From positions 21,638,001-21,702,000 of the forward strand of contig OZ296652.1 of assembly GCA_965655095.1 (NCBI GenBank): a stretch of DNA of 64,000 nt. Reading direction: 5' to 3'. Made by a program: the position numbers and the translations under genes. The notes beneath the pieces were generated by a model that had not been told where the DNA came from, did not search any database, and saw only the letters and a program-made list of their open reading frames with translations. The DNA is from Haplodiscus bocki. Lineage: Eukaryota. How positions within the stretch are numbered: the first letter of the stretch is position 1; each line of letters begins with the position of its first letter. Positions 7,726-64,000 of this stretch are shown here, piece by piece.

Positions 7726-7779
7726 GAAAATTTTCTCTTTTTGCCCTATCTCAATGTGCCTTTTTTCTCTGTTCTATGT

Positions 7780-7947
7780 TTTTTTCTCACTCTAGTTACT
7801 TGTTGCTTCAATCTACCAATTTCGCATCCAACTTTGATTGTGTAGTCGTTGTTTGCATTTCTGTTATTTTTCTCACTCTAGTTACTTGTTGCTTCAATTT
7901 ATCAATTTCACATCCGACTTTGATTGTGTAGTCGTTGTTTGCATTTC
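7780..7947 (+). repeat. 86-bp direct tandem duplication
   Basis: tttctcactctagttacttgttgcttcaat...gattgtgtagtcgttgtttgcatttc occurs twice with period 86 and only a few substitutions. Confidence 0.9.
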
Positions 7948-30125: not shown

Positions 30126-30235
30126 CCTATATTGGTAGAAATTTAATGGGACGGCCAGTTTTCTCCGGTAAATTTTGCGCTTTCCCGTTTTGGTGAAAAT
30201 GCCCTTTAAATCAAAGCGTTTTTTTAATCATCAGT

Positions 30236-33200
30236 TTTCAACTTTAATCACGTTGGTAAAATTTTTGAGAGATAACAATGTTGTCTCTCATTGAGAGATT
30301 ATGACAACCTATTGAGGAAATGAAAAAACTTGTTAGGAAAAAGAATTGTTTGAACGAGACGTAAAGTAGGGAGACCTCTAAACTAGCACGAAATGACAGC
30401 TGGAAGAGAATAAAAACGAAAATCACGGAGAAATTTTCCATGAACTTTGACTGAATTTCCATGTGATCTTGTGAAGACTGATGGGATGGTATTCAAATTG
30501 ATACAGGTTGGACTAACAGGTCTAACACCAAAACAGATAACTTTCATCCTGCAGCGATTTGAGCGTTGCGTTTCGTTTAATTATCATGGGTCGCAAACTT
30601 TCCCAGTGATATTTGTAATTCTGCAGTCGAATGTAATGTTTCTTTCTTTTTTTTCTATAAAGTAGATATTTTCGTATGCAGCAGATTATTTTCAAGGTTT
30701 TTGACGACACATTAGTTCATTAGTTGACGACACGTAATTTTTTGTCCAAGGACAAGCTGAAAAAACACTAAGGCAAAAGGAGTACAAACCAGCCACTTTC
30801 AACTTTGAGTCACGTTGGAAAAATTATCGAGAAGAAACAATGTATTCGACTATGACAACCTAATAACCTAATGAGAAAATCAAAAAATTTGTTAGGAAAA
30901 CACTATGGCAAATGGAAAAAAAGCCAGCCACTTTCAACTTTGAGTCACGTTGGTAAAATTTTTGAGAGATAACAATGTTGTCTCTCATTGAGAGATTAAG
31001 ACAACCTATTGAGGAAATGAAAAAACTTGTTAGGAAAAAGAATTGCTTGAACGAGACGTAAAGTATGGAGACCTCTATACTAGCACGAAATGACAGCTGG
31101 AAGAGAATAAAAACGAAAGTCACGGAGAAATTTTCCTTGAACATTGACTGATTTTCCATTTGATGTTGTGAAGACTGATGGGATGGTATAGAAATTGGTA
31201 CAGATTGGACCGACATCTCCAACAGCAAAACAGATAACTTTCATCCTGCAGCGATTTGAGCGTTGCTTTTCGTTTAATTATCATGGATCGCAAACTCTCC
31301 CAGTGATAATTGAATTTCTGCAGTCAAATGTAATGTTTCTTTCTTTTTTCCTATAAAGTAGATATTTTCGTATACAGCAGAATATTTTCAAGGTTTTTGA
31401 CGACGCATAATTTTATTAGTTGACGACACGTAATATTTTGTCCAACGACAAGCTGAAAAAACACTATGACAAATGGAGTACAAACCATTCACTTTCAACA
31501 TTGAGCCTTGTCGGAAAATCTATCGAGAGGTAACAATATATTCGACTATGACAACCTAATAACCTAATGAGAAAATCAAAAAATTTGTTAGGAAAACACT
31601 ATGGCAAATGGAAAAAAAGCCAGCCATTTTCAACTTTGAGTCACGTTGGTAAGACTTTTGAGAGATAACAATGTTGTCTCTCATTGAGAGATTATGACAA
31701 CCTGTTGTGAAAATGGAAAAACCTGTTAGGAGGAAGAATTGCTTGAACGAGACGTAAAGTATGGAGACCTCTAAACTAGCACGAAATGACAGCTGGAAGA
31801 GAACAAAAACGAAAATCACCGAGAAATTTTCCATGAACATTGACTGGTTTTCCATTGGATCTTGTGAAGACTGATGGGATGGTATACAAAATACAAATTG
31901 GTACAAGTTGGACTAACAGGTCTAACACCAAAACAGATAACTTTTTTTACCTAAGGGATTTGAGCGTTTCCTTGCGTTTAATTATCTTGAATCGCAGGCC
32001 TTCCCAGTGATACTTGAAATTCTGCATTGAAATGTAGCCTTTCCTTCTTTTTCTTCTGTATATTAGTGATTTCCGTAAACAGCAGAGCATTTCCAAGACT
32101 TTCGACAACACATTAGTATTGGATGCCTCTGAAAATGTTTGCAAATTAAGAAACAGCATAAAGAAAACCTCAACAACATTCGGGAAAATAGGAGACTCTT
32201 TGACTATGGAACAAACTAACTGAAAAGTTTTGTCCGAAAACCAGCTGAAAAAACACTATGACAAATGGAGTACAAACCATTCACTTTCAACATTGAGTCT
32301 TGTTGGAAAAATTATCGAGAGGTAACAATGTATTTGACTATGACAACCTAAGGAGGAAATCAAAAAGATTGTTAGGAAAACACTATGGCAAATGGAGTAT
32401 GAACCAGCCACTTTCAACTTTGAGTCACGTTGGTAAAACTTTTGAGAGATAACAATGTTGTCTCTCATTGAGAGATTATGACAACCTACTGTGAAAATGA
32501 AAAAACCTGTTAGGAAGAAGAATTGCTTGAACGAGACGTAAAGTTTGCAGACCTCTAAACTAGCACGAAATGACAGCTGGAAGAGAATAAAAACGAAAAT
32601 CACGGAGAAATTTTCCATGATCATTGACTGATTTTCCATTTGATCTTGTGAAAACTGATGGGATGGTATACAAAATAGAAATTAGTACAAGTTGGACTAA
32701 CAGGTCTAACACCAAAACAGATAACTTTCATCCTGCAGCGATTTGAGCGTTGCTTTTCGTTTAATTATCATGGGTCGCAAACTCTCCCAGTGATAATTGA
32801 ATTTCTGCAGTCAAATGTAATGTTTCTTTCTTTTTTCCTATAAAGTAGATATTTTCGTATACAGCAGAATATTTTCAAGGTTTTTGACGACGCATAATTT
32901 TATTAGTTGACGACACGTAATATTTTGTCCAACGACAAGCTGAAAAAACACTATGACAAATGGAGTACAAACCATTCACTTTCAACATTGAGCCTTGTCG
33001 GAAAATCTATCGAGAGGTAACAATATATTCGACTATGACAACCTAATAACCTAATGAGAAAATCAAAAAATTTGTTAGGAAAACACTATGGCAAATGGAA
33101 AAAAAGCCAGCCATTTTCAACTTTGAGTCACGTTGGTAAGACTTTTGAGAGATAACAATGTTGTCTCTCATTGAGAGATTATGACAACCTGTTGTGAAAA

Positions 33201-36200
33201 TGGAAAAACCTGTTAGGAGGAAGAATTGCTTGAACGAGACGTAAAGTATGGAGACCTCTAAACTAGCACGAAATGACAGCTGGAAGAGAACAAAAACGAA
33301 AATCACCGAGAAATTTTCCATGAACATTGACTGGTTTTCCATTGGATCTTGTGAAGACTGATGGGATGGTATACAAAATACAAATTGGTACAAGTTGGAC
33401 TAACAGGTCTAACACCAAAACAGATAACTTTTTTTACCTAAGGGATTTGAGCGTTTCCTTGCGTTTAATTATCTTGAATCGCAGGCCTTCCCAGTGATAC
33501 TTGAAATTCTGCATTGAAATGTAGCCTTTCCTTCTTTTTCTTCTGTATATTAGTGATTTCCGTAAACAGCAGAGCATTTCCAAGACTTTCGACAACACAT
33601 TAGTATTGGATGCCTCTGAAAATGTTTGCAAATTAAGAAACAGCATAAAGAAAACCTCAACAACATTCGGGAAAATAGGAGACTCTTTGACTATGGAACA
33701 AACTAACTGAAAAGTTTTGTCCGAAAACCAGCTGAAAAAACACTATGACAAATGGAGTACAAACCATTCACTTTCAACATTGAGTCTTGTTGGAAAAATT
33801 ATCGAGAGGTAACAATGTATTTGACTATGACAACCTAAGGAGGAAATCAAAAAGATTGTTAGGAAAACACTATGGCAAATGGAGTATGAACCAGCCACTT
33901 TCAACTTTGAGTCACGTTGGTAAAACTTTTGAGAGATAACAATGTTGTCTCTCATTGAGAGATTATGACAACCTACTGTGAAAATGAAAAAACCTGTTAG
34001 GAAGAAGAATTGCTTGAACGAGACGTAAAGTTTGCAGACCTCTAAACTAGCACGAAATGACAGCTGCAAGAGAATAAAAACGAAAATCACGGAGAAATTT
34101 TCCATGAACATTGACTGATTTTCCAATTGATCTTGTGAAAACTGATGGGATGGTATACAAAATAGAAATTAGTACAAGTTGGACTAACAGGTCTAACACC
34201 AAAACAGATAACTTTCATCCTGCAGCGATTTGAGCGTTGCTTTTCGTTTAATTATCATGGGTCGCAAACTTTCCCAGTGATAATTGAAATTCTGCAGTCA
34301 AATGTAATGTTTCCTTCTTTATTTTCTATAAAAAGTAGTTATTTTCGTATACAGCAGATTGTTTTCAAGGTTTTTGACGACACATTAGTTCATTAGTTGA
34401 CGACACGTAATATTTTGTCCAAGGACAAGCTGAAAAAAAACTATGGCAAAAGGAGTACAAACCAGCCACTTTCAACTTTGAGTCACGTTGGAAAAATTAT
34501 CGAGAAGAAACAATGTATTCGACTATGACAACCTAATAACCTAATGAGGAAATCAAAAAATTTGTTAGGAAAACATCATGGCAAATGGAAAAAAAGCCAG
34601 CCACTTTCAACTTTGAATCACGTTGGTAAAATTTTTGAGAGATAACAATGTTGTCTCTCATTGAGAGATTATGACAACCTATTGAGGAAATGAAAAAACT
34701 TGTTAGGAAAAAGAATTGTTTGAACGAGACGTAAAGTAGGGAGACCTCTAAACTAGCACGAAATGACAGCTGGAAGAGAATAAAAACGAAAATCACGGAG
34801 AAATTTTCCATGAACTTTGACTGATTTTCCATTTGATCTTGTGAAGACTGATGGGATGGTATACAAATTGATACAGGTTGGACTAACAGGTCTAACACCA
34901 AAACAGATAACTTTCATCCTGCAGCGATTTGAGCGTTGCTTTTCGTTTAATTATCATGGGTCGCAAACTTTCCCAGTGATAACTGAAATTCTGCAGTCGA
35001 ATGTAATGTTTCTTTCTTTTTTTTCTATAAAGTAGATATTTTCGTATGCAGCAGATTATTTTCAAGGTTTTTGACGACACCTCAGTTCATTAGTTGACGA
35101 CACGTAATATTTTGTCCAAGGACAAGCTGAAAAAACACTAAGGCAAAAGGAGTACAAACCAGCCACTTACAACTTTGAGTCACGTTGGAAAAGCTATCGA
35201 GAAGAAACAATGTATTCGACTATGACAACCTAATAACCTAATGAGAAAATCAAAAAATTTGTTAGGAAAACACTATGGCAAATGGAAAAAAAGCCAGCCA
35301 CTTTCAACTTTGAGTAACGTTGGTAAAATTTTTGAGAGATAACAATGTTGTCTCTCATTGAGAGATTAAGACAACCTATTGAGGAAATGAAAAAACTTGT
35401 TAGGAAAAAGAATTGCTTGAACGAGACGTAAAGTATGGAGACCTCTATACTAGCACGAAATGACAGCTGGAAGAGAATAAAAACGAAAGTCACGGAGAAA
35501 TTTTCCTTGAACATTGACTGATTTTCCATTTGATGTTGTGAAGACTGATGGGATGGTATAGAAATTGGTACAGATTGGACTGACATCTCCAACAGCAAAA
35601 CAGATAACTTTCATCCTGCAGCGATTTGAGCGTTGCTTTTCGTTTAATTATCATGGATCGCAAACTCTCCCAGTGATAATTGAAATTCTGCAGTCAAATG
35701 TAATGTTTCTTTCTTTTTTCCTATAAAGTAGATATTTTCGTATACAGCAGAATATTTTCAAAGTTTTTGACGACGCATAATTTTATTAGTTGACGACACG
35801 TAATATTTTGTCCAACTACAAGCTGAAAAAACACTATGACAAATGGAGAACAAACCATTCACTTTCAACATTGTGCCTTGTCGGAAAATCTATCGAGAGG
35901 TAACAATATATTCGACTATGACAACCTAATAACCTAATGAGAAAATCAAAAAATTTGTTAGGAAAACACTATGGCAAATGGAAAAAAAAGCCAGCCATTT
36001 TCAACTTTGAGTCACGTTGGTAAGACTTTTGAGAGATAACAATGTTGTCTCTCATTGAGAGATTATGACAACCTGTTGTGAAAATGGAAAAACCTGTTAG
36101 GAGGAAGAATTGCTTGAACGAGACGTAAAGTATGGAGACCTCTAAACTATCACGAAATGACAGCTGGAAGAGAACAAAAACGAAAATCACTGAGAAATTT

Positions 36201-39190
36201 TCCATGAACATTGACTGGTTTTCCATTGGATCTTGTGAAGACTGATGGGATGGTATACAAAATACAAATTGGTACAAGTTGGACTAACAGGTCTAACACC
36301 AAAACAGATAACTTTTTTTACCTAAGGGATTTGAGCGTTTCCTTGCGTTTAATTATCTTGAATCGCAGGCCTTCCCAGTGATACTTGAAATTCTGCATTG
36401 AAATGTAGCCTTTCCTTCTTTTTCTTCTGTATATTAGTGATTTCCGTAAACAGCAGAGCATTTCCAAGACTTTCGACAACACATTAGTATTGGATGCCTC
36501 TGAAAATGTTTGCAAATTAAGAAACAGCATAAAGAAAACCTCAACAACATTCGGGAAAATAGGAGACTCTTTGACTATGGAACAAACTAACTGAAAAGTT
36601 TTGTCCGAAAACCAGCTGAAAAAACACTATGACAAATGGAGTACAAACCATTCACTTTCAACATTGAGTCTTGTTGGAAAAATTATCGAGAGGTAACAAT
36701 GTATTTGACTATGACAACCTAAGGAGGAAATCAAAAAGATTGTTAGGAAAACACTATGGCAAATGGAGTATGAACCAGCCACTTTCAACTTTGAGTCACG
36801 TTGGTAAAACTTTTGAGAGATAACAATGTTGTCTCTCATTGAGAGATTATGACAACCTACTGTGAAAATGAAAAAACCTGTTAGGAAGAAGAATTGCTTG
36901 AACGAGACGTAAAGTTTGCAGACCTCTAAACTAGCACGAAATGACAGCTGCAAGAGAATAAAAACGAAAATCACGGAGAAATTTTCCATGAACATTGACT
37001 GATTTTCCAATTGATCTTGTGAAAACTGATGGGATGGTATACAAAATAGAAATTAGTACAAGTTGGACTAACAGGTCTAACACCAAAACAGATAACTTTC
37101 ATCCTGCAGCGATTTGAGCGTTGCTTTTCGTTTAATTATCATGGGTCGCAAACTTTCCCAGTGATAATTGAAATTCTGCAGTCAAATGTAATGTTTCCTT
37201 CTTTATTTTCTATAAAAAGTAGTTATTTTCGTATACAGCAGATTGTTTTCAAGGTTTTTGACGACACATTAGTTCATTAGTTGACGACACGTAATATTTT
37301 GTCCAAGGACAAGCTGAAAAAAAACTATGGCAAAAGGAGTACAAACCAGCCACTTTCAACTTTGAGTCACGTTGGAAAAATTATCGAGAAGAAACAATGT
37401 ATTCGACTATGACAACCTAATAACCTAATGAGGAAATCAAAAAATTTGTTAGGAAAACATCATGGCAAATGGAAAAAAAGCCAGCCACTTTCAACTTTGA
37501 ATCACGTTGGTAAAATTTTTGAGAGATAACAATGTTGTCTCTCATTGAGAGATTATGACAACCTATTGAGGAAATGAAAAAACTTGTTAGGAAAAAGAAT
37601 TGTTTGAACGAGACGTAAAGTAGGGAGACCTCTAAACTAGCACGAAATGACAGCTGGAAGAGAATAAAAACGAAAATCACGGAGAAATTTTCCATGAACT
37701 TTGACTGATTTTCCATTTGATCTTGTGAAGACTGATGGGATGGTATACAAATTGATACAGGTTGGACTAACAGGTCTAACACCAAAACAGATAACTTTCA
37801 TCCTGCAGCGATTTGAGCGTTGCTTTTCGTTTAATTATCATGGGTCGCAAACTTTCCCAGTGATAACTGAAATTCTGCAGTCGAATGTAATGTTTCTTTC
37901 TTTTTTTTCTATAAAGTAGATATTTTCGTATGCAGCAGATTATTTTCAAGGTTTTTGACGACACCTTAGTTCATTAGTTGACGACACGTAATATTTTGTC
38001 CAAGGACAAGCTGAAAAAACACTAAGGCAAAAGGAGTACAAACCAGCCACTTTCAACTTTGAGTCACGTTGGAAAAGCTATCGAGAAGAAACAATGTATT
38101 CGACTATGACAACCTAATAACCTAATGAGAAAATCAAAAAATTTGTTAGGAAAACACTATGGCAAATGGAAAAAAAGCCAGCCACTTTCAACTTTGAGTC
38201 ACGTTGGTAAAATTTTTGAGAGATAACAATGTTGTCTCTCATTGAGAGATTAAGACAACCTATTGAGGAAATGAAAAAACTTGTTAGGAAAAAGAATTGC
38301 TTGAACGAGACGTAAAGTATGGAGACCTCTATACTAGCACGAAATGACAGCTGGAAGAGAATAAAAACGAAAGTCACGGAGAAATTTTCCTTGAACATTG
38401 ACTGATTTTCCATTTGATGTTGTGAAGACTGATGGGATGGTATAGAAATTGGTACAGATTGGACTGACATCTCCAACAGCAAAACAGATAACTTTCATCC
38501 TGCAGCGATTTGAGCGTTGCTTTTCGTTTAATTATCATGGATCGCAAACTCTCCCAGTGATAATTGAAATTCTGCAGTCAAATGTAATGTTTCTTTCTTT
38601 TTTCCTATAAAGTAGATATTTTCGTATACAGCAGAATATTTTCAAAGTTTTTGACGACGCATAATTTTATTAGTTGACGACACGTAATATTTTGTCCAAC
38701 TACAAGCTGAAAAAACACTATGACAAATGGAGAACAAACCATTCACTTTCAACATTGTGCCTTGTCGGAAAATCTATCGAGAGGTAACAATATATTCGAC
38801 TATGACAACCTAATAACCTAATGAGAAAATCAAAAAATTTGTTAGGAAAACACTATGGCAAATGGAAAAAAAGCCAGCCATTTTCAACTTTGAGTCACGT
38901 TGGTAAGACTTTTGAGAGATAACAATGTTGTCTCTCATTGAGAGATTATGACAACCTGTTGTGAAAATGGAAAAACCTGTTAGGAAGAAGAATTGCTTGA
39001 ACGAGACGTAAAGTATGGAGACCTCAAAACTAGCACGAAATGACAGCTGGAAGAGAACAAAAACGAAAATCACTGAGAAATTTTCCATGAACAATGACTG
39101 GTTTTCCATTGGATCTTGTGAAGACTGATGGGATGGTATATAAAATACAAATTGGTACAAGTTGGACTAACAGGTCTAACACCAAAACAG
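30236..39190. repeat. Higher-order repeat block P-Q-R-S-R-S-P-Q-R-S-P-Q-R' (4-mer 2884 bp plus an extra 1487-bp dimer)
   Basis: Near-identical ORF copies are offset by 1487 (31556/33043; 31947/33434) and 2884 (34533/37417; 35230/38114; 33743/36627). Diagnostic variants: aagtagggag (P), gattggac.gacatctcc (Q), 110-bp insert (R) and aagtttgcag (S). Confidence 0.92.
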
Positions 39191-42100
39191 ATAACTTTCA
39201 TCCTGCAGCGATTTCGGCGTTGTTTTTCGTTTATTTATCATGGATCGCAAACTTTCCCAGTGATAATTGAAGTTCTGTAGTCAAATGCACTGTTTCTTTC
39301 TTTTTTTTCCATAAAGTAGTTACTTTCGTATACAGCAGATTATTTTCAAGATTTTTGACGACACATTAGTTCATTAGTTGACAACACGTAATACTTTGTC
39401 CAAGGACAAGCTGAAAGAACACTATGGCAAAAGGAGTACAAACCAGCCGCTTTCAAATTTGAGTCACGTTGGAAAATTGATCGAGAAGAAACAATGTGTT
39501 CGACTATGACAACCTAATAACCTAATGAGAAAATCAAAAAATTTGTTAGGAAAACATAATGGCAAATGGAAAAGAAGCCAGCCACTTTCAAATTTGGGTC
39601 ACGTTGGTAAAACTTTTGAGAGATAACAATGTTGCCTCTCATTGAGAGATTATGACAACCTATTGTGAAAATGAAAAAACCTGTTAGGAAGAAGAATTGC
39701 TTGAACGAGACGTAAAGTATGGAGACCTCTAAACTAGCACGAAATGACAGCTGGGAGAGAAAAAAAACGAAAATCACGGAGAAATTTTCCTTGAACATTG
39801 ACTGATTTTCCATTTGATGTTGTGAAGACTGATGGGATGGTATAGAAATTGGTACAGATTGGACTGACATCTCCAACAGCAAAACAGATGACTTTCATCC
39901 TGCAGCGATTTGAGCGTTGCTTTTCGTTTAATTATCATGGATCGCAAACTCTCCCAATGATAATTGAAATTCTGCAGTCAAATGTAATGTTTCTTTCTTT
40001 TCCTATAAAGTTGATATTTTCGTATACAGCAGAATATTTTCAAGGTTTTTGACGACGCATAATTTCATTAGTTGACGACACGTAATATTTTGTCCAACGG
40101 CAAGCTGAAAAAACACTATGACAAAAGGAGTACAAACCATTCACTTTCAACATTGAGTCTTGTCGGAAAATCTATCGAGAGGTAACAATGTATTCGACTA
40201 TGACAACCTAATGAGGAAATCAAAAAGTTTGTTAGGAAAACACTATGGCAAATGGAAAAAAAGCCAGCCATTTTCAACTTTGAGTCACGTTGGTAAAACT
40301 TTTGAGAGATAACAATGTTGTCTCTCATTGAGAGATTATGACAACCTGTTGTGAAAATGGAAAAACCTGTTAGGAAGAAGAATTGCTTGAACGAGACGTA
40401 AAGTATGGAGACCTCTAAACTAGCACGAAATGACAGCTGGAAGAGAACAAAAACGAAAATCACGGAGAAATTTTCCATGAACATTGACTGATTTTCCATT
40501 GGATCTTGTGAAGACTGATGGAATGGTATACAAAATACATATTGGTACAAGTTGGACTAACATGTCTAACACCAAAACAGATAACTTTCATCCTGCAGCG
40601 ATTTGAGCGTTGCTTTTTGTTTATTTATCATGGATCGCCAACTTTCCCAGTGATAATTGAAATTCTGCAGCCAAATGTAACGTTTCTTTCTTTTTTTTTC
40701 CATAAAGTAGTTTTTTTCGTATACAGCAGAATATTTTCAAGATTTTTGACGACACATTAGTTCATTAGTTGACGACACGTAATTTTTTGTCGACGGACAA
40801 GCTGAAAAAACACTATGACAAATGGAGTACAAACAATTCACTTTCAACATTGAGTCTTGTTGGAAAATCTATCGAGAGGTAACAATGTATTCGACTATGA
40901 CAACCTAATGAGGAAATCAAAAAGTTTGTTAGGAAAACACTATGGCAAATGGAAAAAAAAGCCGGCCACTTTCAAATTTGAGTCACGTTGGTAAAACTTT
41001 TGAGAGATAACAATGTTGTATCTCATTGAGAGATTATGACAACCTATTGTGAAAATGAAAAAACCTGTTAGGAAGAAGAATTGGTTGAACGAGACGTAAA
41101 ATATGGAGACCTCTAAACTAGCACGAAATGACAGCTGGAAGAGAAAAAAAAACGAAAATCATGGAGAAAATTTCCATGAACATTGACTGGTTTTCCATTG
41201 GATCTTGTGAAGACTAATGGGATGGTATACAAAATACAAACTGGTACAAGTTGAACTAACAGGTCTAACACCAAAACAGATAACTTTCATCCTGCAGCGA
41301 TTTCGGCGTTGTTTTTCGTTTATTTATCATGGATCGCAAACTTTCCCAGTGATAATTGAAGTTCTGTAGTCAAATGCACTGTTTCTTTCTTTTTTTTCCA
41401 TAAAGTAGTTACTTTCGTATACAGCAGATTATTTTCAAGATTTTTGACGACACATTAGTTCATTAGTTGACAACACGTAATACTTTGTCCAAGGACAAGC
41501 TGAAAGAACACTATGGCAAAAGGAGTACAAACCAGCCGCTTTCAAATTTGAGTCACGTTGGAAAATTGATCGAGAAGAAACAATGTGTTCGACTATGACA
41601 ACCTAATAACCTAATGAGAAAATCAAAAAATTTGTTAGGAAAACATAATGGCAAATGGAAAAGAAGCCAGCCACTTTCAAATTTGGGTCACGTTGGTAAA
41701 ACTTTTGAGAGATAACAATGTTGCCTCTCATTGAGAGATTATGACAACCTATTGTGAAAATGAAAAAACCTGTTAGGAAGAAGAATTGCTTGAACGAGAC
41801 GTAAAGTATGGAGACCTCTAAACTAGCACGAAATGACAGCTGGGAGAGAAAAAAAACGAAAATCACGGAGAAATTTTCCTTGAACATTGACTGATTTTCC
41901 ATTTGATGTTGTGAAGACTGATGGGATGGTATAGAAATTGGTACAGATTGGACTGACATCTCCAACAGCAAAACAGATGACTTTCATCCTGCAGCGATTT
42001 GAGCGTTGCTTTTCGTTTAATTATCATGGATCGCAAACTCTCCCAATGATAATTGAAATTCTGCAGTCAAATGTAATGTTTCTTTCTTTTCCTATAAAGT

Positions 42101-52300: not shown

Positions 52301-55300
52301 AGATAACTTTCATCCTGCAGCGATTTGAACGTTGCTTTTCGTTTAATTATCATGGATCGCAAACTTTCCCAGTGATAATTGAATTTCTGCAGTCAAATGT
52401 AATGTTTCCTTCTTTTTTTCTGTGAAGTAGTTTTTTTCGTATACAGCAGAGCATTTTTTAAGGTTTTTGACGACACATTAGTTCATTAGTTGGCGACACG
52501 TAAGATTTTGTCCAAGGACCAGCTGAAAAAACATTATGGCAAGTGGAGTACAAACCAGCCACTTTCAATTTTGAGTCACGTTGGAAAAATTATCGAGAGG
52601 TAACAATGTATTCGACTATGACAACCTAATAACCTAATGAGAAAATCAAAAAATTTGTTAGGAAAACACTATGGCAAATGGAAAAAAAGCCAGCCACTTT
52701 CAACTTTGAGTCGCGTTGGTAAATTTTTTGAGAGATAACAATGTTGTCTCTCATTGAGAGGTTATGACAACCTATTGAGGAAATGAAAAAACTTGTTAGG
52801 AAAAAGAATTGTTTTAACGAGACGTAAAGTATGGAGACCTATAAACTAGCACGAAATGACAGCTGGAAGAGAATAAAAACGAAAATCACGGAGAAATTTT
52901 CCATGAACCTTGACTGTTTTTCCATTGGATCTTGTGAAAACTGATGGGATGGTATACAAAATACAAATTGGTACAAGTTGGACTAACAGGTCTAACAACA
53001 AAACAGATAACTTTCATCCTGCAGCGTTTTGAGCGTTGCTTTTCGTTTAATTATCATGGATCGCAAACTTTCTCAGTGATAATTGAAATTCTGCAGTCAA
53101 ATGTAATGTTTCTTTCTTTTTTTTCTATAAAGTAGTTATTTTCGTATACAGCAGATTATTTTCAAGGTTTTTGACGACACATTAGTTCATTAGTTGACGA
53201 CACGTAATATTTTGTCCAAGGACAAGCTGAAAAAACAATAAGGCAAAAGGAGTACAAACCAGCCACTTTCAACTTTGAGTCACGTTGGAAAAATTATCGA
53301 GAAGTAACAATGTATTCGACTATGACAACCTATTAGCCTAATGAGGAAATCAAAAAAATTGTTAAGAAAACATTATGGCAAATGGAAAAGAAGCCAGCCA
53401 CTTTCAACTTTGAGTAACGTTGGTAAAATTTTTGAGAGATAACAATGTTGTCTCTCATTGAGAGATTATGACAACCTATTGAGGAAATGAAAAAACTTGT
53501 TAGGAAAAAGAATTGTTTTAACGAGACGTAAAGTATGGAGACCTATAAACTAGCACGAAATGACAGCTGGAAGAGAATAAAAACGAAAATCACGGAGAAA
53601 TTTTCCATGAACCTTGACTGTTTTTCCATTGGATCTTGTGAAAACTGATGGGATGGTATACAAAATACAAATTGGTACAAGTTGGATTAACAGATCTAAC
53701 AGCAAAACAGATAACTTTCATCCTGCAGCGATTTGAACGTTGCTTTTCGTTTAATTATCATGGATCGCAAACTTTCCCAGTGATAATTGAATTTCTGCAG
53801 TCAAATGTAATGTTTCCTTCTTTTTTTCTGTGAAGTAGTTTTTTTCGTATACAGCAGAGCATTTTTTAAGGTTTTTGACGACACATTAGTTCATTAGTTG
53901 ACGACACGTAAGATTTTGTCCAAGTACCAGCTGAAAAAACATTATAGCAAGTGGAGTACAAACCAGCCACTTTCAATTTTAAGTCACGTTGGAAAAATTA
54001 TCGAGAGGTAACAATGTATTCGACTATGACAACCTAATAACCTAATGAGAAAATCAAAAAATTTGTTAGGAAAACACTGTGGCAAATGGAAAAAAAGGCA
54101 GCCACTTTCAACTTTGAGTCGCGTTGGTAAATTTTTTGAGAAATATTAATGTTGTCTCTCATTGAGAGGTTATGACAACCTATTGAGGAAATGAAAAAAC
54201 TTGTTAGGAAAAAGAATTGTTTTAACGAGACGTAAAGTATGGAGACCTATAAACTAGCACGAAATGACAGCTGGAAGAGAATAAAAACAAAAATCACGGA
54301 GAAATTTTCCATGAACCTTGACTGTTTTTCCATTGGATCTTGTGAAAACTGAAGGGATGGTATACAAAATACAAATTGGTACAAGTTGGACTAACAGGTC
54401 TAACAACAAAACAGATAACTTTCATCCTGCAGCGTTTTGAGCGTTGCTTTTCGTTTAATTATCATGGATCGCAAACTTTCTCAGTGATAATTGAAATTCT
54501 GCAGTCAAATGTAATGTTTCTTTCTTTTTTTCTATAAAGTAGTTATTTTCGTATACAGCAGATTATTTTCAAGGTTTTTGACGACACATTAGTTCATTAG
54601 TTGACGACACGTAATATTTTGTCCAAGGACCAGCTGAAAAAAACACTATGGCAAAAGGAAAAGAAGCCAGCCACTTTCAATTTTGAGTCACTTTGCTGTA
54701 ATTATCGAGAGGTAACGATGTATTCGACTATGACAACCTAATAACCTAATGAGGAAATCAAAAAATTTGTTAGGAAAACACTATGGCAAATGGAACAAAA
54801 GCCAGCCACTTTCAACTTTGAGTCACGTTGGTAAAATTTTTGAGAGATAACAATGTTGTCTCTCCTTGAGAGATTAAGTCAACCTATTGAGGAAATGAAA
54901 AAACTTGTTAGGAAAAAGAATTGTTTGAACGAGACGTAAAGAATGGAAACCTCTAAACTAGCACGAAATGACAGCTGGAAGAGAATAAAAACGAAAATCA
55001 CGGAGAAATTTTCCATGAGCATTAAGTGATTTTTCATTTGATCTTGTGAAGACTGATGGGATGGTATACAAATTGGTACAGGTTGGACTAACATGTCTAA
55101 CACCAAAACAGATAACTTTCATCCTGCCGCGATTTGAGCGTTGCTTTTCGTTTAATTATCATGGATCGCAAACTTTCCCAGTGATAACTGAAATACTGCA
55201 GTCAAATGTCATGTTTCTTTCCTTTTTTCTGTAAAGTAGTTTTTTTCGTATACAGCAGAGCATTTTTAAAGGTTTTTGACGACACATTAGTTCATTAGTT

Positions 55301-58300
55301 GGCGACACGTAAGATTTTGTCCAAGGATCAGCTGAAAAAACATTATGGCAAGTGGAGTACAAACCAGCCACTTTCATTTTTGAGTCACGTTGGAAAAATT
55401 ATCGAGAGGTAACAATGTATTCGACTATGACAACCTAATAACCTAATGAGAAAATCAAAAAATTTGTTAGGAAAACACTATTGCAAATGGAAAAAAAAGC
55501 CAGCCACTTTCAACTTTGAGTCAAGTTGGTAAATTTTTTGAGAGATAACAATTTTGTCTCTCATTGAGAGATTATGACAACCTATTGAGGAAATGAAAAA
55601 ACTTGTTAGGAAAAAGAATTGCTTGAACGAGACGTAAAGTATGGAGACCTCTATACTAGCACGAAATGACAGCTGGAAGAGAATAAAAACGAAAGTCACG
55701 GAGAAATTTTCCTTGAACATTGACTGATTTTCCATTTGATGTTGTGAAGACTGATGGGATGGTATAGAAAATGGTACAGGTTGGATTAACAGATCTAACA
55801 GCAAAACAGATAACTTTCATCCTGCAGCGATTTGAACGTTGCTTTTCGTTTAATTATCATGGATCGCAAACTTTCCCAGTGATAATTGAAAATCTGCAGT
55901 CAAATGTAATGTTTCCTTCTTTTTTTCTGTGAAGTAGTTTTCTTCGTATACAGCAGAGCATTTTTCAAGGTTTTTGACGACACATTAGTTCATTAGTTGA
56001 CGACACGTAAGATTTTGTCCAAGGACCAGCTGAAAAAACATTATGGCAAGTGGAGTACAAACCAGCCACTTTCAATTTTGAGTCACGTTGGAAAAATTAT
56101 CGAGAGGTAACAATGTATTCGACTATGACAACCTAATAACCTAATGAGAAAATCAAAAAATTTGTTAGGAAAACACTATGGCAAATGGAAAAAAAGCCAG
56201 CCACTTTCAACTTTGAGTCGCGTTGGTAAATTTTTTGAGAGATAACAATGTTGTCTCTCATTGAGAGGTTATGACAACCTATTGAGGAAATGAAAAAACT
56301 TGTTAGGAAAAAGAATTGTTTTAACGAGACGTAAAGTATGGAGACCTCTAAACTAGCACGAAATGACAGCTGGAAGTGAATAAAAACGAAAATCAGGGAG
56401 AAATTTTCCATGAACATTGACTGATTTTCCATTTTATCTTGTGAAAACTGATGGGATGGTATACAAAATACAAATTGGTACAAGTTGGACTAACAGGTCT
56501 AACACAAAAATAGATAACTTTCATCCTGCAGCGATTTGAGCGTTGCTTTTCGTTTAATTATCATGGGTCGCAAACTTTCCCAGTGATAACTGAAATTCTG
56601 CAGTCAAATGTAATGTTTCCTTCTTTTTTCTGTAAAGTAGTTTTTTTCGTATACAACAGAGCATTTTTCAAGGTTTTTGACGACACATTAGTTCATTAGT
56701 TGATGACACGTAAGATTTTGTCCAAGGACCAGCTGAAAAATCAATATGGCAAATGGAGTACAAACCAGCCACTTTCAATTTTGAGTCACGTTGGAAAAAA
56801 TATCGAGAGGTAACAATGTATTCGACTATGACAACCTAATAAACTAATGAGAAAATCAAAAAATTTGTTAGGAAAACACTGTGGCAAATGGAAAAAAAGC
56901 CAGCCACTTTCAACTTTGAGTCACGTTGGTAGATTTTTTGAGAGATAACAATGTTGCCTCTCATTGAGAGATTATGAAAACCTATTGAGGAAATGAAAGA
57001 ACTTGTTAGGAAAAAGAATTGCTTGAACGAGACGTAAAGTATGGAGACCTCTATACTAGCACGAAATGACAGCTGGAAGAGAATGAAAACGAAAATCACG
57101 GAGAAATTTTCCTTGAACATTGACCGATTTTCCATTTGATGTTGTGAAGACTGATGGGATGGTATAGAAATTGGTACAGGTTGGACTAACAGGTCTAACA
57201 GCAAAACAGATAAACTTCATCCTGCAGCGATTTGGGCGTTGCTTTTCGTTTAATTATCATGGATCGCAGACTTCCCCAGTGATAATTGAAATTCCGCAGG
57301 CAAATGTAATGTTTCCTTCTTTTTTTCTGTAAAATAGTTTTTTTCGTATAGAGCAGAGCGTTTTTGAAGATTTTTTACGACAAATTGTTTCGTTAGTTGA
57401 CGACACGTAAGATTTTATCCAAGGACCAGCTGAAAAAACACTATGGCAAAGGGAAAAGAAGCCAGCCACTTTCAATTTTGAGTCACTTTGGTGAAATTAT
57501 CGAGAGGTAAAAATGTATTCGACTATGACAACCTAATAACCTAATGAGGAAATCAAAAAATTTGTTAGGAAAACACTATGGCAAATGGAAAAAAAGCCAG
57601 CCACTTTCAACTTTGAGTCACGTTGGTAACTTTTTCGAGAGATAACAATGTTGTCTCTCATTGAGAGATTATGACAACCTATTGTGGAAATGAAAAAACT
57701 TGTTAGGAAAAAGAATTGCTTGAACGAGACGTAAAGTATGGAGACCTCTATACTAGCACGAAATGACAGCTGGAAGAGAGAAAAAACGAAAGTCACGGAG
57801 AAATTTTCCTTGAACATCGACTGATTTTCGATTTGATGTTGTGAAGACTGATGGGATGGGATAGAAATTGGTACAGGTTGGACTAACAGATCTAACAGCA
57901 AAACAGATAACTTTCATCCTGCAGCGATTTTAGCGTTGCTTTTCGTTTAATTATCATGGATCGCAAATTTTCCCAGTGATAATTGAAATTCTGCAGTCAA
58001 ATGTATTGTTTCTTTCTTTTTTTTCTATAAAGTAGTTATTTTCGTATACAGCAGATTATTTTCAAGATTTTTGACGACACATTAGGTCATTAGTTGACGA
58101 CACGTAATATTTTGTCCAACGACAAGCTGAAAAAACACTATGACAAATGGAGTACAAACCATTCACTTTCAACATTGAGTGTTATTGGAAAAATTATCGA
58201 GAAGTAACAATGTATTCGACTTTGACAACCTATTAGCCTAATGAGGAAATCAAAAAAATTGTTAAGAAAACATTATGGCAAATGGAAAAGAAGCCAGCCA

Positions 58301-61300
58301 CTTTCAACTTTGAGTAACGTTGGTAAAATTTTTGAGAGATAACAATGTTGTCTCTCATTGAGAGATTATGACAACCTATTGAGGAAATGAAAAAACTTGT
58401 TAGGAAAAAGAATTGTTTTAACGAGACGTAAAGTATGGAGAACTCTATACTAGCACGAAAAAGCAGCTGGAAGAGAAAAAAACCGAAAGTCACGGAGAAA
58501 TTTTCCTTGAACATTGACTGATTTTCGATTTGATGTTGTGAAGACTGATGGGATGGGATAGAAAATGGTACAGGTTGGACTAACAGATCTAACAGCAAAA
58601 CAGATAACTTTCATCCTGCAGCGATTTTAGCGTTGCTTTTCGTTTAATTATCATGGATCGCAAACTTTCCCAGTGATAACTGAAATTCTGCAGTCAAATG
58701 TAATGTTTCTTTCTTTTTTTTCTACAAAGTAGTTATTTTCGTATACAGCAGATTATTTTCAAGATTTTTGACGACACATTAGGTCATTAGTTGACGACAC
58801 GTAATATTTTGTCCAACGACAAGCTGAAAAAACACTATGACAAATGGAGTACAAACCATTCACTTTCAACATTGAGTGTTGTTGGAAAAATTATCGAGAA
58901 CTAACAATGTATTCGACTATGACAACCTAATAACCTAATGAGAAAATCAAAAAATTTGTTAGGAAAACACTATGGCAAAGTGAAAAAAAGCCAACTACTT
59001 TCAACTTTGAGTCACGTTGGTAAAAATTTTGAAAGATAACAATGTTGTCTCTCATTGAGAGATTTTGACAACCTATTGAGGAAATGAAAAATATTGTTAG
59101 GAAAAAGAATTGTTTTAACGAGACGTAAAGTATGGAGACCTCTAAACTAGCACGAAATGACAGCTGGAAGAGAATAAAAACGAAAATCAGGGAGAAATTT
59201 TCCATGAACATTGACTGATTTTCCATTTGATCTTGTGAAAACTGATGGGATGGTATACAAAATACAAATTGGTACAAGTGGTACAAGTTGGACTAACAGG
59301 TCTAACACAAAAACAGATAACTTTCATCCTGCAGCGATTTGAGCGTTGATTTTCGTTCAATTATCATGGGTCGCAAACTTTCCCGGTGATAACAGAAATT
59401 CTGCAGTCAAACGTAATGTTTCCTTCTTTTTTCTGTAAAGTAGTTTTTTTTGTATACAACAGAGCACTTTTCAAGGTTTTTGACGACACATTAGTTCATT
59501 AATTGACGACACGTAATATTTTGTCCAACGACAAGCTGAAAAAACACTATGACAAATGGAGTACAACCCATTCACTTTCAACTTTGAGTGTTGTTGGAAA
59601 AATTATCGAGAAGTAACAATGTATTCGACTATGACAACCTAATAACCTAATGAGGAAATCAAAAAATTTGTTAGGAAAACATCATGGCAAATGGAAAAAA
59701 AGCCAGCCACTTTCAACTTTGAATCACGTTGGTAAAATTTTTGAAAGATAACAATGTTGTCTCTCATTGAGAGATTATGACAACCTATTGAGGAAATGAA
59801 AAAACTTGTTAGGAAAAAGAATTTTTTTAACGAGACGTAAAGTATGGAGACCTCTAAACTAGCACGAAATGACAGCTGGAAGAGAGTAAAAACGAAAATC
59901 AGGGAGAAATTTTGCATGAACATTGACTGATTTTCCATTTGATCTTGTGAAACTGATGGGATGGTATACAAAATACAAATCGGTACAAGTTGGACTAACA
60001 GGTCTAACACCAAAACAGATAACTTTCATCCTGCAGCGATTTGGGCGTTGCTTTTCGTTTAATTATCATGGATCGCAGACTTCCCCAGTGATAATTGAAA
60101 TTCCGCAGTCAAATGTAATGTTTCCTTCTTTTTTTCTGTAAAATAGTTATTTTCGTATAGAGCAGAGCGTTTTTGAAGATTTTTTGCGACAAATTATTTC
60201 GTTAGTTGACGACACGTAAGTTTTATCCCAGGACCAGCTGAAAAAACACTATGGCAAAGGGAAAAGAAGCCAGCCACTTTCAATTTTGAGTCACTTTGGT
60301 GAAATTATCGAGAGGTGAAAATGTATTCGACTATGACAACCTAATAACCTAATGAGGAAATCAAAAAATTTGTTAGGAAAACACTATGGCAAATGGAAAA
60401 AAAGCCAGCCACGTTCAACTTTGAGTCACGTTGGTAAATTTTTTGAAATATAGCAATGTTGTCTCTCATTGAGAGATTATGACAACCTAATGAGGAAATG
60501 AAAAAACTTGTTAGGAAAAAGAATTGTTTGAACGAGACGTAAAGAATGGAAACCTCTAAACTAGCACGAAATGACAGCTGGAAGAGAATAAAAACGAAAA
60601 TCACGGAGAAATTTTCCATGAGCATTAAGTGATTTTTCATTTGATCTTGTGAAGACTGATGGGATGGTATACAAATTGGTACAGGTTGGACTAACAGGTC
60701 TAACACCAAAACAGATAACTTTCATCCTGCAGCGATTTGAGCGTTGCTTTTCGTTTAATTATCATGGATCGCAAACTTTCCCAGTGATAACTGAAATTCT
60801 GCAGTCAAATGTAATTTTTCCTTCTTTTTTTCTGTAAAGTAGTTATTTTCGTATACAGCAGAGCAATGTTCAAGGTTTTTGACGACACATTAGTTCATTA
60901 CTTGACGACACGTAAGATTTTGTCCAACGACAAGCTGAAAAAACAATATGGCAAATGGAGTACAAACCAGCCACTTTCAATTCTGTGTCACGTTGGAAAA
61001 ATTATCGAGAGGTAGCAATGTACTCGACTATGACAACCTAATAACCTAATGAGAAAATCAAAAAGTTTGTTGGGAAAACACTATGGCAAATGGAAAAAAA
61101 GCCAGCCGCTTTCAACTTTGAGTCACGTTGTTAAAATTTTTGAAAGATAACAATGTTGTCTCTCATTGAGAGATTATGACAACCTGTTGAGGAAATGAAG
61201 AAAATTGTTAGGAAAAAGAATTGCTTGAACGAGACGTAAAGTATGGAGACCTCTATACTAGCACGAAATGACAGCTGGAAGAGAATAAAAACGAAAGTCA

Positions 61301-64000
61301 CGGAGAAATTTTCCTTGAACATTGACTGATTTTCCATTTGATCTTGTGAAGACTGATGGGATGGTATAGAAATTGTTACAGGTTCGACTAACAGGTCTAA
61401 CAGCAAAACAGATAAACTTCATCCTGCAGCGATTTGAGCGTTGCTTTTCGTTCAATTATCATGGATCGCAGACTTTCCCAGTGATAAGTGAAATTCTGCA
61501 GTCGATTGTACTGTTTCCTACTTTTTTTCTGTAAAGTAGTTATTTTCGTATACAGCAGAGCATTTTTGAAGATTTTTTACGACACAATATTTCAATAATT
61601 GACGACACGTAAGATTTCATCCAAGGACCAGCTGAAAAAACACTATGGCATAGGGAAAAAAAGCCAGCCACTTTCAATTTTGAGTCACTTCGGTAAAATT
61701 ATAGAGAGGTAACAATGTATTCGTCTATGACAACCTAATAACCTAATGAGGAAATCATAAAATTTGTTAGGAAAACACTATGGCAAATGGAAAAAAAGCC
61801 AGGCACTTTCAACTTTGAGTCACGTTGTTAAAATTTTTGAGAGATAACAATGTTGTCTCTCATTGAGAGATTATGACAACCTATTGAGGAAATGAAAAAA
61901 CTTGTTAGGAAAAAGAATTGCTTGAACGAGACGTAAAGTATGGAGACCTCTATACTAGCACGAAATGACAGCTGGAAGAGAATAAAAACGAAAATCAAGG
62001 AGAAATTTTTCATGAACAGTGACTGATTTTCCATTTGATCTTGTGAAGACTGATGGGATGGTGTAGAAATTGGTACAGGTTGGACTAACAGGTCTAACAG
62101 CAAAACAGATAAATTTCATCCTGCAGCGACTTGAGCTTTTCTTTTCGTTTAATTATCATGGATCGCAGACTTTCCCAGTGATAATTGAAATTCTGCAGTC
62201 AAATGTAATGTTTCCTTCTTTTTTTCTGTAAAGTAGTTATTTTTGTATAGAGCAGAGCATTTTTGAAGAATTTTAACGACACATTATTTCATTAGTTGAC
62301 GACACGTAAGATTTTGTCCAAGGACCAGCTGAAAAAACACTATGGCAAACGGAGTACAAACCAGCCACTTTCAACTTTGAGTCACTGTGGAAAAGTTATT
62401 GAGAGTTGACAATGGATACAACTATGACACTCTATTGGGGAAATCAAAAAGCTTGGTAGGAAAAAGAAGTGTTTGAACAAAACGTAAAACATAGAAACCT
62501 CCAATACGAGCACGAAATGACAGCTGGAAGAGAACAAAAACGAAAGTCACGCAGAGTTTTTACATGCGCCTTGACTTAGATTCCATTTGATCTCGTGAAG
62601 ACTAATAGGATGGTACACAAAGTGGTACAGGTTGGAGTAACAGGTCCCTGATAACTTTTTTCCTAAGGGGAATTGAGTGTTCCATTGCATTTCATTATCA
62701 TGGATCGCAGGCTTTCCCAGTGATAATTGAACTTCTGCAGTGAAATGAAGTGTTTCCCTATTTTTCTCTGTATGTTAGTGACTTCCTTATACAGCAGAGC
62801 ATTTACAAGATTTTTGATGACACATTATTTCAATAGTTGGCGAAACGTAAGATTTTGTCCAAGGACCAGATGGAAAAACACTATGGCAAATGGAGTACAA
62901 ACCATCCACTTTCAAATTTGAGTCACGTTGGGAAAAATTGTCGAGAGGTAACAATGTAAACGACAATGACAACCTAATGAGGAAATCAAAAAATTTTCTG
63001 GGGAAAACACTATGGCAAATGGAGTAAAAGCCAGCCATTTTCATTTTTGAAACACGTTGGTAAAAGTATTGAGAGATAACAATGTATACGACTATGACAA
63101 CGTAATGAGGAAAATCAAAAAGCTTGTTGGGAAAGAAAGTGTTTGAAGAAGACGCAATAGATGGAGACCTCTATACTAGCACGAAATGACAGCTGGAAGA
63201 GAATAAAAACGAAAGTCACGGAGAAATTTTCCTTGAACATTGACTGATTTTCCATTTGATCTTGTGAAGACTGATGGGATGGTATAGAAATTGTTACAGG
63301 TTCGACTAACAGGTCTAACAGCAAAACAGATAAACTTCATCCTGCAGCGATTTGAGCGTTGCTTTTCGTTCAATTATCATGGATCGCAGACTTTCCCAGT
63401 GATAAGTGAAATTCTGCAGTCGATTGTACTGTTTCCTACTTTTTTTCTGTAAAATAGTTATTTTCGTATAGAGCAGAGCGTTTTTGAAGATTTTTTGCGA
63501 CAAATTATTTCGTTAGTTGACGACACGTAAGTTTTATCCCAGGACCAGCTGAAAAAACACTATGGCAAAGGGAAAAGAAGCCAGCCACTTTCAATTTTGA
63601 GTCACTTTGGTGAAATTATCGAGAGGTGAAAATGTATTCGACTATGACAACCTAATAACCTAATGAGGAAATCAAAAAATTTGTTAGGAAAACACTATGG
63701 CAAATGGAAAAAAAGCCAGCCACGTTCAACTTTGAGTCACGTTGGTAAATTTTTTGAAATACAGCAATGTTGTCTCTCATTGAGAGATTATGACAACCTA
63801 ATGAGGAAATGAAAAAACTTGTTAGGAAAAAGAATTGTTTGAACGAGACGTAAAGAATGGAGACCTCTAAACTAGCACAAAATGACAGCTGGAAGAGAAT
63901 AGAAACGAAAGTCACGGAGAAAGTTTCAATGAGCATTGACTGTTTTTCCATTTGATCTTGTGAAGACTGATGGGATGGTATACAAATTGGTACAGGTTGG

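What the first reader, a model, noticed from the sequence alone, without database searches (positions are those of the whole stretch)
30236..64000. Large ~697-bp satellite with nested, switching higher-order repeats (candidate centromeric or heterochromatic array)
Seen: about 49 head-to-tail monomers with three levels of periodicity: an internal about 135-bp sub-repeat, the monomer, and HORs whose period changes along the array (4-mer, 2-mer, then 3-mer, then a patchwork of variants from about 44 kb). Established: HOR organisation is typical of actively homogenising centromeric satellites such as primate alpha satellite. Inference: this is an actively turning-over satellite with a long monomer that I do not recognise, possibly centromeric.
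Basis: partly seen in the sequence, partly recalled or inferred. Interest (0 to 1): 0.7.

Follow-up and report, generated by a model that had tools for sequence, protein, structure and literature searches.

The report
Single-locus 198-kb long-unit satellite array
The window holds the first sixth of a real, non-coding 198-kb tandem repeat of about 300 units of 0.64-0.77 kb that occurs at one place only in this 1.5-Gb genome and is reshuffled by local block duplications; this is an ordinary kind of satellite DNA, and nothing shows that it is a centromere.

Summary
From 30236 to the window's end there are 49 head-to-tail units of about 697 bp. Each has two ~135-bp sub-repeats, and there are multi-unit duplications: a 4-unit block, a 2-unit block, a 3-unit block, then a patchwork.

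The window shows only the start. The array runs C5:21,668,236-21,865,990 (197.8 kb, 299 units, one strand, no gaps). The window's 697-bp form is a young, derived subfamily. Most units are 636 or 764 bp and about 80% identical to it.

The "HORs" are about 30 independent block duplications of 2-26 units, almost all in two copies. They are not a homogenised many-copy HOR.

Five conserved words found genome-wide are fully accounted for by this array, with 0-4 hits left over, which is the control level. The family therefore sits at a single locus.

I found no RNA family, protein domain, coding signal, conserved RNA structure, or homology to the flanking mobile elements. Public short-read contigs from two samples bridge the left junction, and their word depth rises steeply inside the array.

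Best reading: a non-coding, macrosatellite-like array evolving by unequal exchange. A centromere role is untested and has no support here.

The scan has already followed up three other single-locus HOR satellites in this genome, but not this sequence.

The parts
30236..64000 (+). Proximal 33.8 kb (49 units) of the 197.8-kb tandem array. This is the young 697/704-bp subfamily, 91-93% identical within itself and 76-84% identical to the rest of the array.
30150..30228 (+). Truncated 5' fragment (profile positions 10-97) of a dispersed ~530-bp element. It abuts the first base of the array and is not homologous to the satellite.
   Evidence: E 7.5e-20 for the fragment; best hit in the satellite E 0.11
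32945..33080 (+). Example of sub-repeat copy 1 (~135 bp).
33081..33218 (+). Example of sub-repeat copy 2 (~138 bp). The number of these copies (1, 2, 3 or 4) sets the unit-length class.
33001..35883 (+). Copy 1 of the 4-unit block (types C E A B).
   Evidence: 6 differences in 2.88 kb from copy 2
35884..38767 (+). Copy 2 of the 4-unit block.
31514..32305 (+). 792-bp 'type C' unit that keeps the ancestral ~100-bp segment lost from the 697-bp units. It is identical to 33001-33792. A third copy lies at 35884-36676.
39472..40862 (+). Units G and H of the 3-unit block. Their core columns are identical to 41561-42951 (shift 2,089 bp).
43650..64000 (+). Patchwork part. Units are 84-98% alike with only scattered pairs at 98% or more. 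It includes the one-sub-repeat short units 45042-45603 and 61694-62254, and the diverged units 62255-63610 that lead into the older subfamilies.

Best explanation
This is non-coding satellite DNA of the long-unit, single-locus kind (macrosatellite-like). It is one 197.8-kb head-to-tail array of 299 units on contig C5, at 21.67-21.87 Mb of 119 Mb.

The ancestral unit is about 636-765 bp. It consists of a ~470-bp core and a ~100-bp segment plus one to four copies of a ~128-135-bp sub-repeat.

The array is old, since its subfamilies are only 76-85% alike. It is kept in flux by unequal exchange or replication-associated duplication of blocks of 2-26 units. This yields near-identical block pairs among diverged neighbours.

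The window contains the youngest and most homogeneous subfamily. That subfamily arose after loss of the ~100-bp segment. I infer no sequence-specific cellular function; the structure is what recombination-driven turnover without selection on sequence produces.

Shown: anatomy, extent, single locus, lack of coding or known RNA content, and the block duplications. Inferred: the mechanism (unequal crossing-over or slippage) and the lack of function.
For: - Periodicity and segmentation.
- Full extent 21,668,236-21,865,990, one strand, no uncovered stretch of 200 bp or more, no N.
- 299 units in discrete length classes, explained by 1-4 sub-repeats, a ~100-bp segment and a ~245-bp deletion.
- Direct neighbours are 79-93% identical, while 160 of 299 units have a twin at 98% or more. 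There are 31 diagonal runs with periods of 2-26 units and about 2 copies each.
- Block copies carry private differences, and breakpoints lie inside units.
- Single locus. Five words give 79, 52, 186, 248 and 254 forward hits genome-wide, of which 79, 52, 186, 247 and 250 are inside the array. Reverse hits number 0-3 and reversed-pattern controls 0-5.
- The looser BLAST-type searches give 290, 274 and 258 candidates for 299 units, and every scored hit is in the array.
- Non-coding: Rfam 0, tRNA 0, and only one chance hit at the relaxed threshold. Pfam 0. No codon periodicity (p 0.80), and the ORF length falls within the range of shuffles. No conserved RNA structure on either strand. The DNA fold has z +0.92.
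- Read support. The left junction is bridged in two samples, and word depth rises from 15-55 in the flank to hundreds or thousands in the array.
- Framework for unequal crossing-over, HORs and macrosatellites: PMC8122249.
Against: - No functional data of any kind exist (chromatin, RNA, cytology), so 'no function' is only the default.
- The core is fairly well conserved between old subfamilies (0.72-0.97 per 40 columns). That could reflect constraint rather than homogenisation.
- A second, unrelated single-locus array lies directly beside this one. The ~290-kb region may therefore be a special chromosomal domain.
- Unit length (0.64-0.77 kb) is below the range usually called macrosatellite.
Confidence: 0.75

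Rival explanations
1. It is the chromosome-specific centromeric or pericentromeric satellite of this chromosome. Each chromosome would carry its own unrelated long array that recruits CENP-A, as in potato and Vicia faba.
For: - The array is large (198 kb), uninterrupted and on one strand, with ongoing local homogenisation.
- It is flanked by another tandem array and by mobile-element fragments, not by recognisable genes.
- Chromosome-specific centromeric satellites with long monomers are documented (PMC7403623).
- Earlier unchecked notes list other single-locus satellites on other pieces of this genome.
Against: - No feature tested here points to a centromere specifically.
- Blocks are present in only 2-3 copies, not as a homogenised core.
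- There is no CENP-B-box-like motif.
- AT content equals that of the flanks.
- Single-locus satellites are common in this genome, so most of them cannot be the centromere.
- In many organisms one satellite family occupies all centromeres (PMC7403623), and this family is on one chromosome only.
Confidence: 0.08
2. The unit is a piece of a mobile element, or of the rDNA spacer, that was amplified in place. Other satellites of this genome are reported to have arisen this way.
For: - The array starts exactly where a dispersed ~530-bp element is cut off (window 30150-30228).
- That element family itself forms 2-3-copy tandems and a periodic cluster on C12.
- An abundant element lies about 245 bp beyond the right end.
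- Earlier unchecked notes describe transposon- and spacer-derived satellites in this genome.
Against: - The element profile finds nothing significant in the satellite (best E 0.11, on the opposite strand).
- The rest of the element is not at the right flank.
- The satellite profile finds nothing in the flanks or in 93 kb of other loci.
- No word or BLAST-type hit for any part of the unit lies outside the array.
- No transposon protein domain is present.
Confidence: 0.1
3. It is a tandem array of genes for an undescribed small RNA or a small protein. This genome is reported to hold U14, 7SL and tRNA arrays.
For: - Other 'satellites' of this genome were read as RNA-gene arrays (unchecked).
- Most units carry a minus-strand open frame of 90-144 codons.
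Against: - Rfam gives nothing at gathering scores, and only one chance hit at E 0.09.
- There are no tRNAs and no pol III A or B boxes.
- Conservation shows no gene-versus-spacer contrast.
- Consensus folding energies are -5.5 and -2.5 kcal/mol with positive covariation terms.
- The open frame has no codon-position signal (p 0.80), carries frameshifting indels and is no longer than in shuffled sequence.
- Pfam gives nothing.
- No RNA run holds the sequence, although few runs are available.
Confidence: 0.02
4. The array, or its near-identical block copies, is an assembly artefact.
For: - Units m3 and m5 are 100% identical over 792 bp.
- Only short-read contigs were available, and they cannot span a unit.
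Against: - The left junction is bridged with 0-2 differences in two samples, and word depth rises 10- to 50-fold inside the array.
- Block copies differ at a few private positions, and breakpoints fall inside units.
- 198 kb contains no N and has orderly subfamily domains.
Confidence: 0.03

Closest known systems
Human macrosatellites (DXZ4, D4Z4, NBL2)
   Same: Long repeat units in tandem at one or a few non-centromeric loci, in arrays of tens to hundreds of kb (PMC8122249).
   Different: Those units are 1.4-3.3 kb and CpG-rich, and some are coding (DUX4) or bound by CTCF. Here the units are 0.64-0.77 kb, 35% G+C and non-coding, and their chromatin state is unknown.
Primate alpha-satellite higher-order repeats
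   Same: Head-to-tail units in which neighbours are diverged while multi-unit blocks are near-identical. This comes from block amplification (PMC8122249).
   Different: Alpha satellite has 171-bp units and occurs at all centromeres. Its HORs are repeated many times at 97-100% identity, and it carries a CENP-B box. Here the units are about four times longer, the family is at one locus, and each block is present about twice with periods of 2-26 units. No CENP-B-box-like motif is present.
Chromosome-specific long-monomer centromeric satellites of potato and Vicia faba
   Same: Long monomers, and a family restricted to one chromosome (PMC7403623).
   Different: Those are shown to bind CENH3, and in potato they derive from LTR-retrotransposon fragments. 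Here binding is untested and no transposon homology was found.
Euchromatic satellite-like tandem repeats (Tribolium Cast1-9)
   Same: Satellite-type arrays that lie outside centromeric heterochromatin and evolve by local homogenisation (PMC4675708).
   Different: Cast families have units of about 170 or 340 bp, many short arrays on several chromosomes, and exchange between chromosomes. Here there is one very long array and no second locus.

Membership tests
Satellite DNA (non-coding tandem array) | Many head-to-tail copies of one unit forming a long contiguous array | tested here: met
   299 units over 197.8 kb, all on one strand, with no uncovered stretch of 200 bp or more
Satellite DNA (non-coding tandem array) | The unit holds no gene | tested here: met
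   Rfam, tRNA, Pfam, codon-periodicity and covariation tests are all negative
Centromeric satellite with alpha-satellite-type HORs | Occupied by CENP-A/CENH3 and located at the primary constriction | not testable with these tools
   No chromatin or cytological data are available. Only four short-read contig runs exist.
Centromeric satellite with alpha-satellite-type HORs | The same family is present at the centromeres of all or many chromosomes | tested here: not met
   Every genome-wide word hit is accounted for by this one array, with a leftover of 0-4 at control level
Centromeric satellite with alpha-satellite-type HORs | One HOR homogenised over many tandem copies (97-100% between copies) | tested here: not met
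   31 runs with periods of 2-26 units, about 2 copies each and at most about 3. They cover 144 of 299 units.
Macrosatellite | Unit much larger than ordinary satellites, up to a few kb | tested here: inconclusive
   Units are 636-765 bp, with extremes of 390-1,234 bp. This is longer than nucleosome-sized satellites but below the 1.4-3.3 kb of the named human examples (PMC8122249).
Macrosatellite | Array at one or a few specific loci | tested here: met
   Single locus, C5:21,668,236-21,865,990
Transposon- or rDNA-spacer-derived satellite | The unit is homologous to a dispersed element or to the rDNA spacer | tested here: not met
   No hit outside the array for any part of the unit. The profile of the flanking element does not match the unit. 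Relatives below roughly 70% identity would be missed.
Tandem RNA-gene array | The unit contains a recognisable or structurally conserved RNA gene with a more variable spacer | tested here: not met
   Rfam negative. Conservation is even along the unit. No covariation-supported structure on either strand.

The most novel reading that the evidence does not exclude
This animal could have chromosome-specific centromeres, each built on its own unrelated single-locus satellite. This 198-kb long-unit array, perhaps together with the adjoining ~85-kb array, would then be the centromere of contig C5. That is the arrangement known from potato and Vicia faba, and it would give a sequence-defined centromere in a lineage where none is described.
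Probability: 0.07. Interest if true: 0.55.

Novelty: new member of a known kind. Interest (0 to 1): 0.2.

Why it matters
As it stands this is a newly described satellite family in a poorly studied animal genome. It is useful as a chromosome-specific FISH or cytogenetic marker. It is also a clean example of how a long array evolves. It shows sub-repeat copy-number variants, a derived young subfamily at one edge, and about 30 independent block duplications.

It would matter more only if chromatin data showed that it, or the set of single-locus satellites in this genome, marks centromeres.

The practical lesson for the scan is that HOR-like structure alone does not indicate a centromere in this genome. 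Three other single-locus satellites with HOR-like structure have already been followed up here.

Tried and rejected
- **TRF on the window:** the period limit of 500 hides the 697-bp unit, so I replaced it with word-distance and BLAST segmentation.
- **Whole-unit search of the genome:** not scored because there were too many candidates. I replaced it with five short word searches with controls and three sub-unit searches.
- **Megablast self-comparison for block duplications:** it lost most pairs, so I used diagonal runs in the unit identity matrix instead.
- **mafft --auto on 299 units:** timed out. A faster mode was used.
- **Fetching copies of the left-flank element with the fetch from genomes:** The loci option of the genome search supplied them.
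- **Satellite derived from the left-flank element:** rejected.
- **The neighbouring 1.2-kb family as a distant relative of this one:** rejected.
- **Minus-strand ORF as a gene:** rejected.
- **Hidden structured RNA:** rejected.
- **CENP-B-box-like core and pol III boxes:** absent.
- **Dyad symmetry:** one 11-bp-stem hairpin occurs in the second sub-repeat of the window subfamily, but it is not conserved in the array consensus. The whole unit folds no better than shuffles.
- **Organism identity:** not established. Run names are coded, and earlier notes disagree between coral and acoel.
- **Earlier notes on neighbouring windows:** The look-up by sequence was blank, which means nothing.
Full report
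**The observation**

In 30-64 kb of the window, the distance between successive copies of the same 14-mer peaks at 697 bp (4,255 pairs). Secondary peaks fall at 704, 2884, 1487 and 2089 bp. The first 30 kb has almost no repeated words.

BLAST with one unit finds 49 consecutive units, all on the + strand, from 30235/30236 to 64000. TRF, which cannot see periods above 500, still reports the internal 129-135-bp sub-repeat.

The consensus of the window's units is 696 bp. It consists of two diverged sub-repeat copies plus about 425 bp of unique sequence.

The pairwise identity matrix reads A B C D C E A B C E A B for units 1-12 and F G H F' G H for units 13-18. After unit 19 there are no near-identical neighbours.

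**Extent**

The window is G000:C5:21,638,001-21,702,000, on a 119.1-Mb contig of a 1.5-Gb assembly. I fetched the following 200 kb and probes farther out.

The array runs without interruption to C5:21,865,990. That is 197.8 kb, entirely on one strand, with no N and no uncovered stretch of 200 bp or more. Probes at 21.9-25 Mb and at 20-21.6 Mb contain none of it.

An anchor search finds 299 units.

**Anatomy of the whole array**

- The consensus of all units is about 765 bp.
- Unit lengths fall into discrete classes. These are about 636 bp (132 units, one sub-repeat), 764 bp (78, two), 895 bp (3, three) and 1,234 bp (1, four).
- The 697-bp class (51 units) has two sub-repeats but lacks a ~100-bp segment. 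The 551-562-bp class (8 units) has one sub-repeat.
- The 390-bp class (26 units) is the 636-bp form with a ~245-bp deletion.
- The window's 697-bp form is therefore derived. The ~100-bp segment is present in about 70% of all units. In the window it survives only in the three 792-bp type C units, where it matches distal units at 81-83%.
- The window subfamily is the most homogeneous part (91-93% within itself) and is only 76-84% identical to the rest.

**Higher-order structure**

Across the array, direct neighbours are 79-93% identical. Yet 160 of 299 units have a twin at 98% or more, and 96 have one at 99.5% or more, a few units away.

Runs along the diagonals of the identity matrix give 31 multi-unit duplications. 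Their periods are 2-26 units (1.26-17.7 kb). Nearly all are present in about two copies, with a maximum of about three. Together they cover 144 of 299 units.

The two copies of the 2.88-kb block in the window differ at 6 positions. Units m3 and m5 are identical. Differences cluster beyond breakpoints that lie inside units.

This is a mosaic of independent, low-copy segmental duplications in an old array. Unequal exchange is expected to produce exactly this pattern. It is not one HOR homogenised over many copies, as in active human centromeres (PMC8122249).

**Single locus**

Five conserved words of 23-31 bases were searched genome-wide with 2-3 mismatches allowed.

| Search | Forward hits genome-wide | Inside the array | Left over |
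|---|---|---|---|
| | 79 | 79 | 0 |
| | 52 | 52 | 0 |
| | 186 | 186 | 0 |
| | 248 | 247 | 1 |
| | 254 | 250 | 4 |

Reverse-strand hits were 0, 0, 0, 0 and 3. The reversed-pattern controls gave 0-5. The leftover is therefore at the level of the controls.

Looser BLAST-type searches with three parts of the unit gave 290, 274 and 258 first-look candidates for 299 units. Every scored hit was in the array.

Within this assembly the family exists at one place only. Relatives below roughly 70% identity would escape these searches.

**What the unit is not**

- Rfam finds nothing at gathering scores in the whole window, and only a chance CRISPR-repeat hit (E 0.09) at the relaxed threshold. ARAGORN finds no tRNA.
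- Most units carry a minus-strand open frame of 90-144 codons. It translates to F/L/S-rich low-complexity sequence and has no Pfam match.
- That frame shows no codon-position periodicity of substitutions (p 0.80) and contains many frameshifting indels. It is no longer than in shuffled sequence.
- Identity between the consensuses of old subfamilies is fairly even along the unit (0.72-0.97 per 40 columns). There is no gene-versus-spacer contrast. No CENP-B-box-like core or pol III A or B box is present.
- RNAalifold on 18 maximally diverse cores gives -5.5 and -2.5 kcal/mol on the two strands, with positive covariation terms.
- The unit folds as single-stranded DNA no better than shuffles (z +0.92).
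- No paper in the library prints any of three conserved words.

**Junctions and neighbourhood**

The last ~80 bp before the array (window 30150-30228) are the first 88 positions of a dispersed ~530-bp element. That element is found on many chromosomes and on both strands.

Its profile matches the flank fragment at E 7.5e-20 but matches nothing significant in the satellite. The rest of the element is not at the right flank. The array therefore abuts a truncated element, but it is not demonstrably derived from it.

Beyond the right end lie about 245 bp of unique sequence, then a very abundant element (2,083 candidates).

About 7 kb beyond the right end a second tandem family begins, with units of about 1.2 kb (1,205 bp x 4.2, a 4,346-bp duplication, 1,134 bp x 2). 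It too is confined to this locus (C5:21.873-21.958 Mb, + strand only, 65-100% identity). It has no Pfam domain and is unrelated to the 697/765-bp family at profile level.

CpG observed/expected is 0.72-0.82 in the array and 0.89-1.21 in the flanks. G+C in the array equals that of the flanks.

**Reads**

Four runs from one study (two samples, organism coded) hold 37-45% of the sampled words. None is on record as RNA.

I laid them on window 29801-35800, which is 6,000 letters. Contigs bridge the left junction in both samples with 0-2 differences. Summed word depth rises from about 15-55 in the flank to hundreds or thousands in the array.

These are short-read contigs. They show that the junction and the multi-copy state are real, but they cannot confirm the copy numbers of the blocks.

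**Interpretation**

The best-supported reading is a non-coding, single-locus, long-unit satellite that evolves by unequal exchange. It is old in origin and has a young subfamily at its proximal edge.

HOR-type organisation results from block amplification and also occurs in pericentric satellites (PMC8122249). Large non-centromeric arrays are known as well (PMC4675708).

In many organisms one family occupies all centromeres. Chromosome-specific centromeric satellites with long monomers do exist in potato and Vicia faba (PMC7403623). A centromere role therefore cannot be excluded by sequence, but nothing found here argues for it.

Earlier unchecked notes of this scan record three other followed-up single-locus satellites with HOR-like structure in this same genome. 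They also record satellites traced to transposons, to the rDNA spacer or to RNA genes. Those notes prompted the tests for transposon and RNA-gene origin made here, and both were negative for this array.

The organism is not established. Earlier agents guessed a reef coral and an acoel worm, and I rely on neither.

Noticed in passing
L038-L040, L017, L018 (G000:C5:21,872,700-21,958,100): A second, unrelated tandem family starts about 7 kb beyond the array's right end. It includes a 1,205-bp unit x 4.2, a 4,346-bp duplication, a 1,134-bp unit x 2 and older copies at 65-80% identity. All 47 scored hits are at this one locus and on the + strand. It has no Pfam domain. About 290 kb of the chromosome therefore consists of two adjacent single-locus arrays.
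   Followed up: partly
window 30150-30228; L042-L052; G000:C12:43,308,129-43,321,802: A dispersed element of about 530 bp whose 5' start carries a GC-rich palindrome. At least 35 copies lie on many chromosomes and both strands, often as 2-3 tandem copies or inverted pairs. On C12 its start recurs at spacings of about 1.0-4.1 kb, mostly ~1,560 bp, as if it were part of another tandem array.
   Followed up: partly
L037:4247-4500 (G000:C5:21,866,247-21,866,500): A very abundant dispersed element (2,083 first-look candidates at 74-80% identity on all large contigs) begins about 245 bp beyond the array's right end.
   Followed up: no
window 7777-7947: A small tandem duplication of an 86-bp unit (2.0 copies, 94% match) in the left flank.
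   Followed up: no
window ~11-12 kb and ~23-24 kb: A short pair of direct repeats 12,367 bp apart in the otherwise unique left flank (24 shared 14-mers).
   Followed up: no
window 29950 and 30159: Two single-base differences (C>T and T>C) are seen in contigs of runs X2 and X4 but not X3, all from the same sample. They are probably heterozygous alleles in the flank.
   Followed up: no
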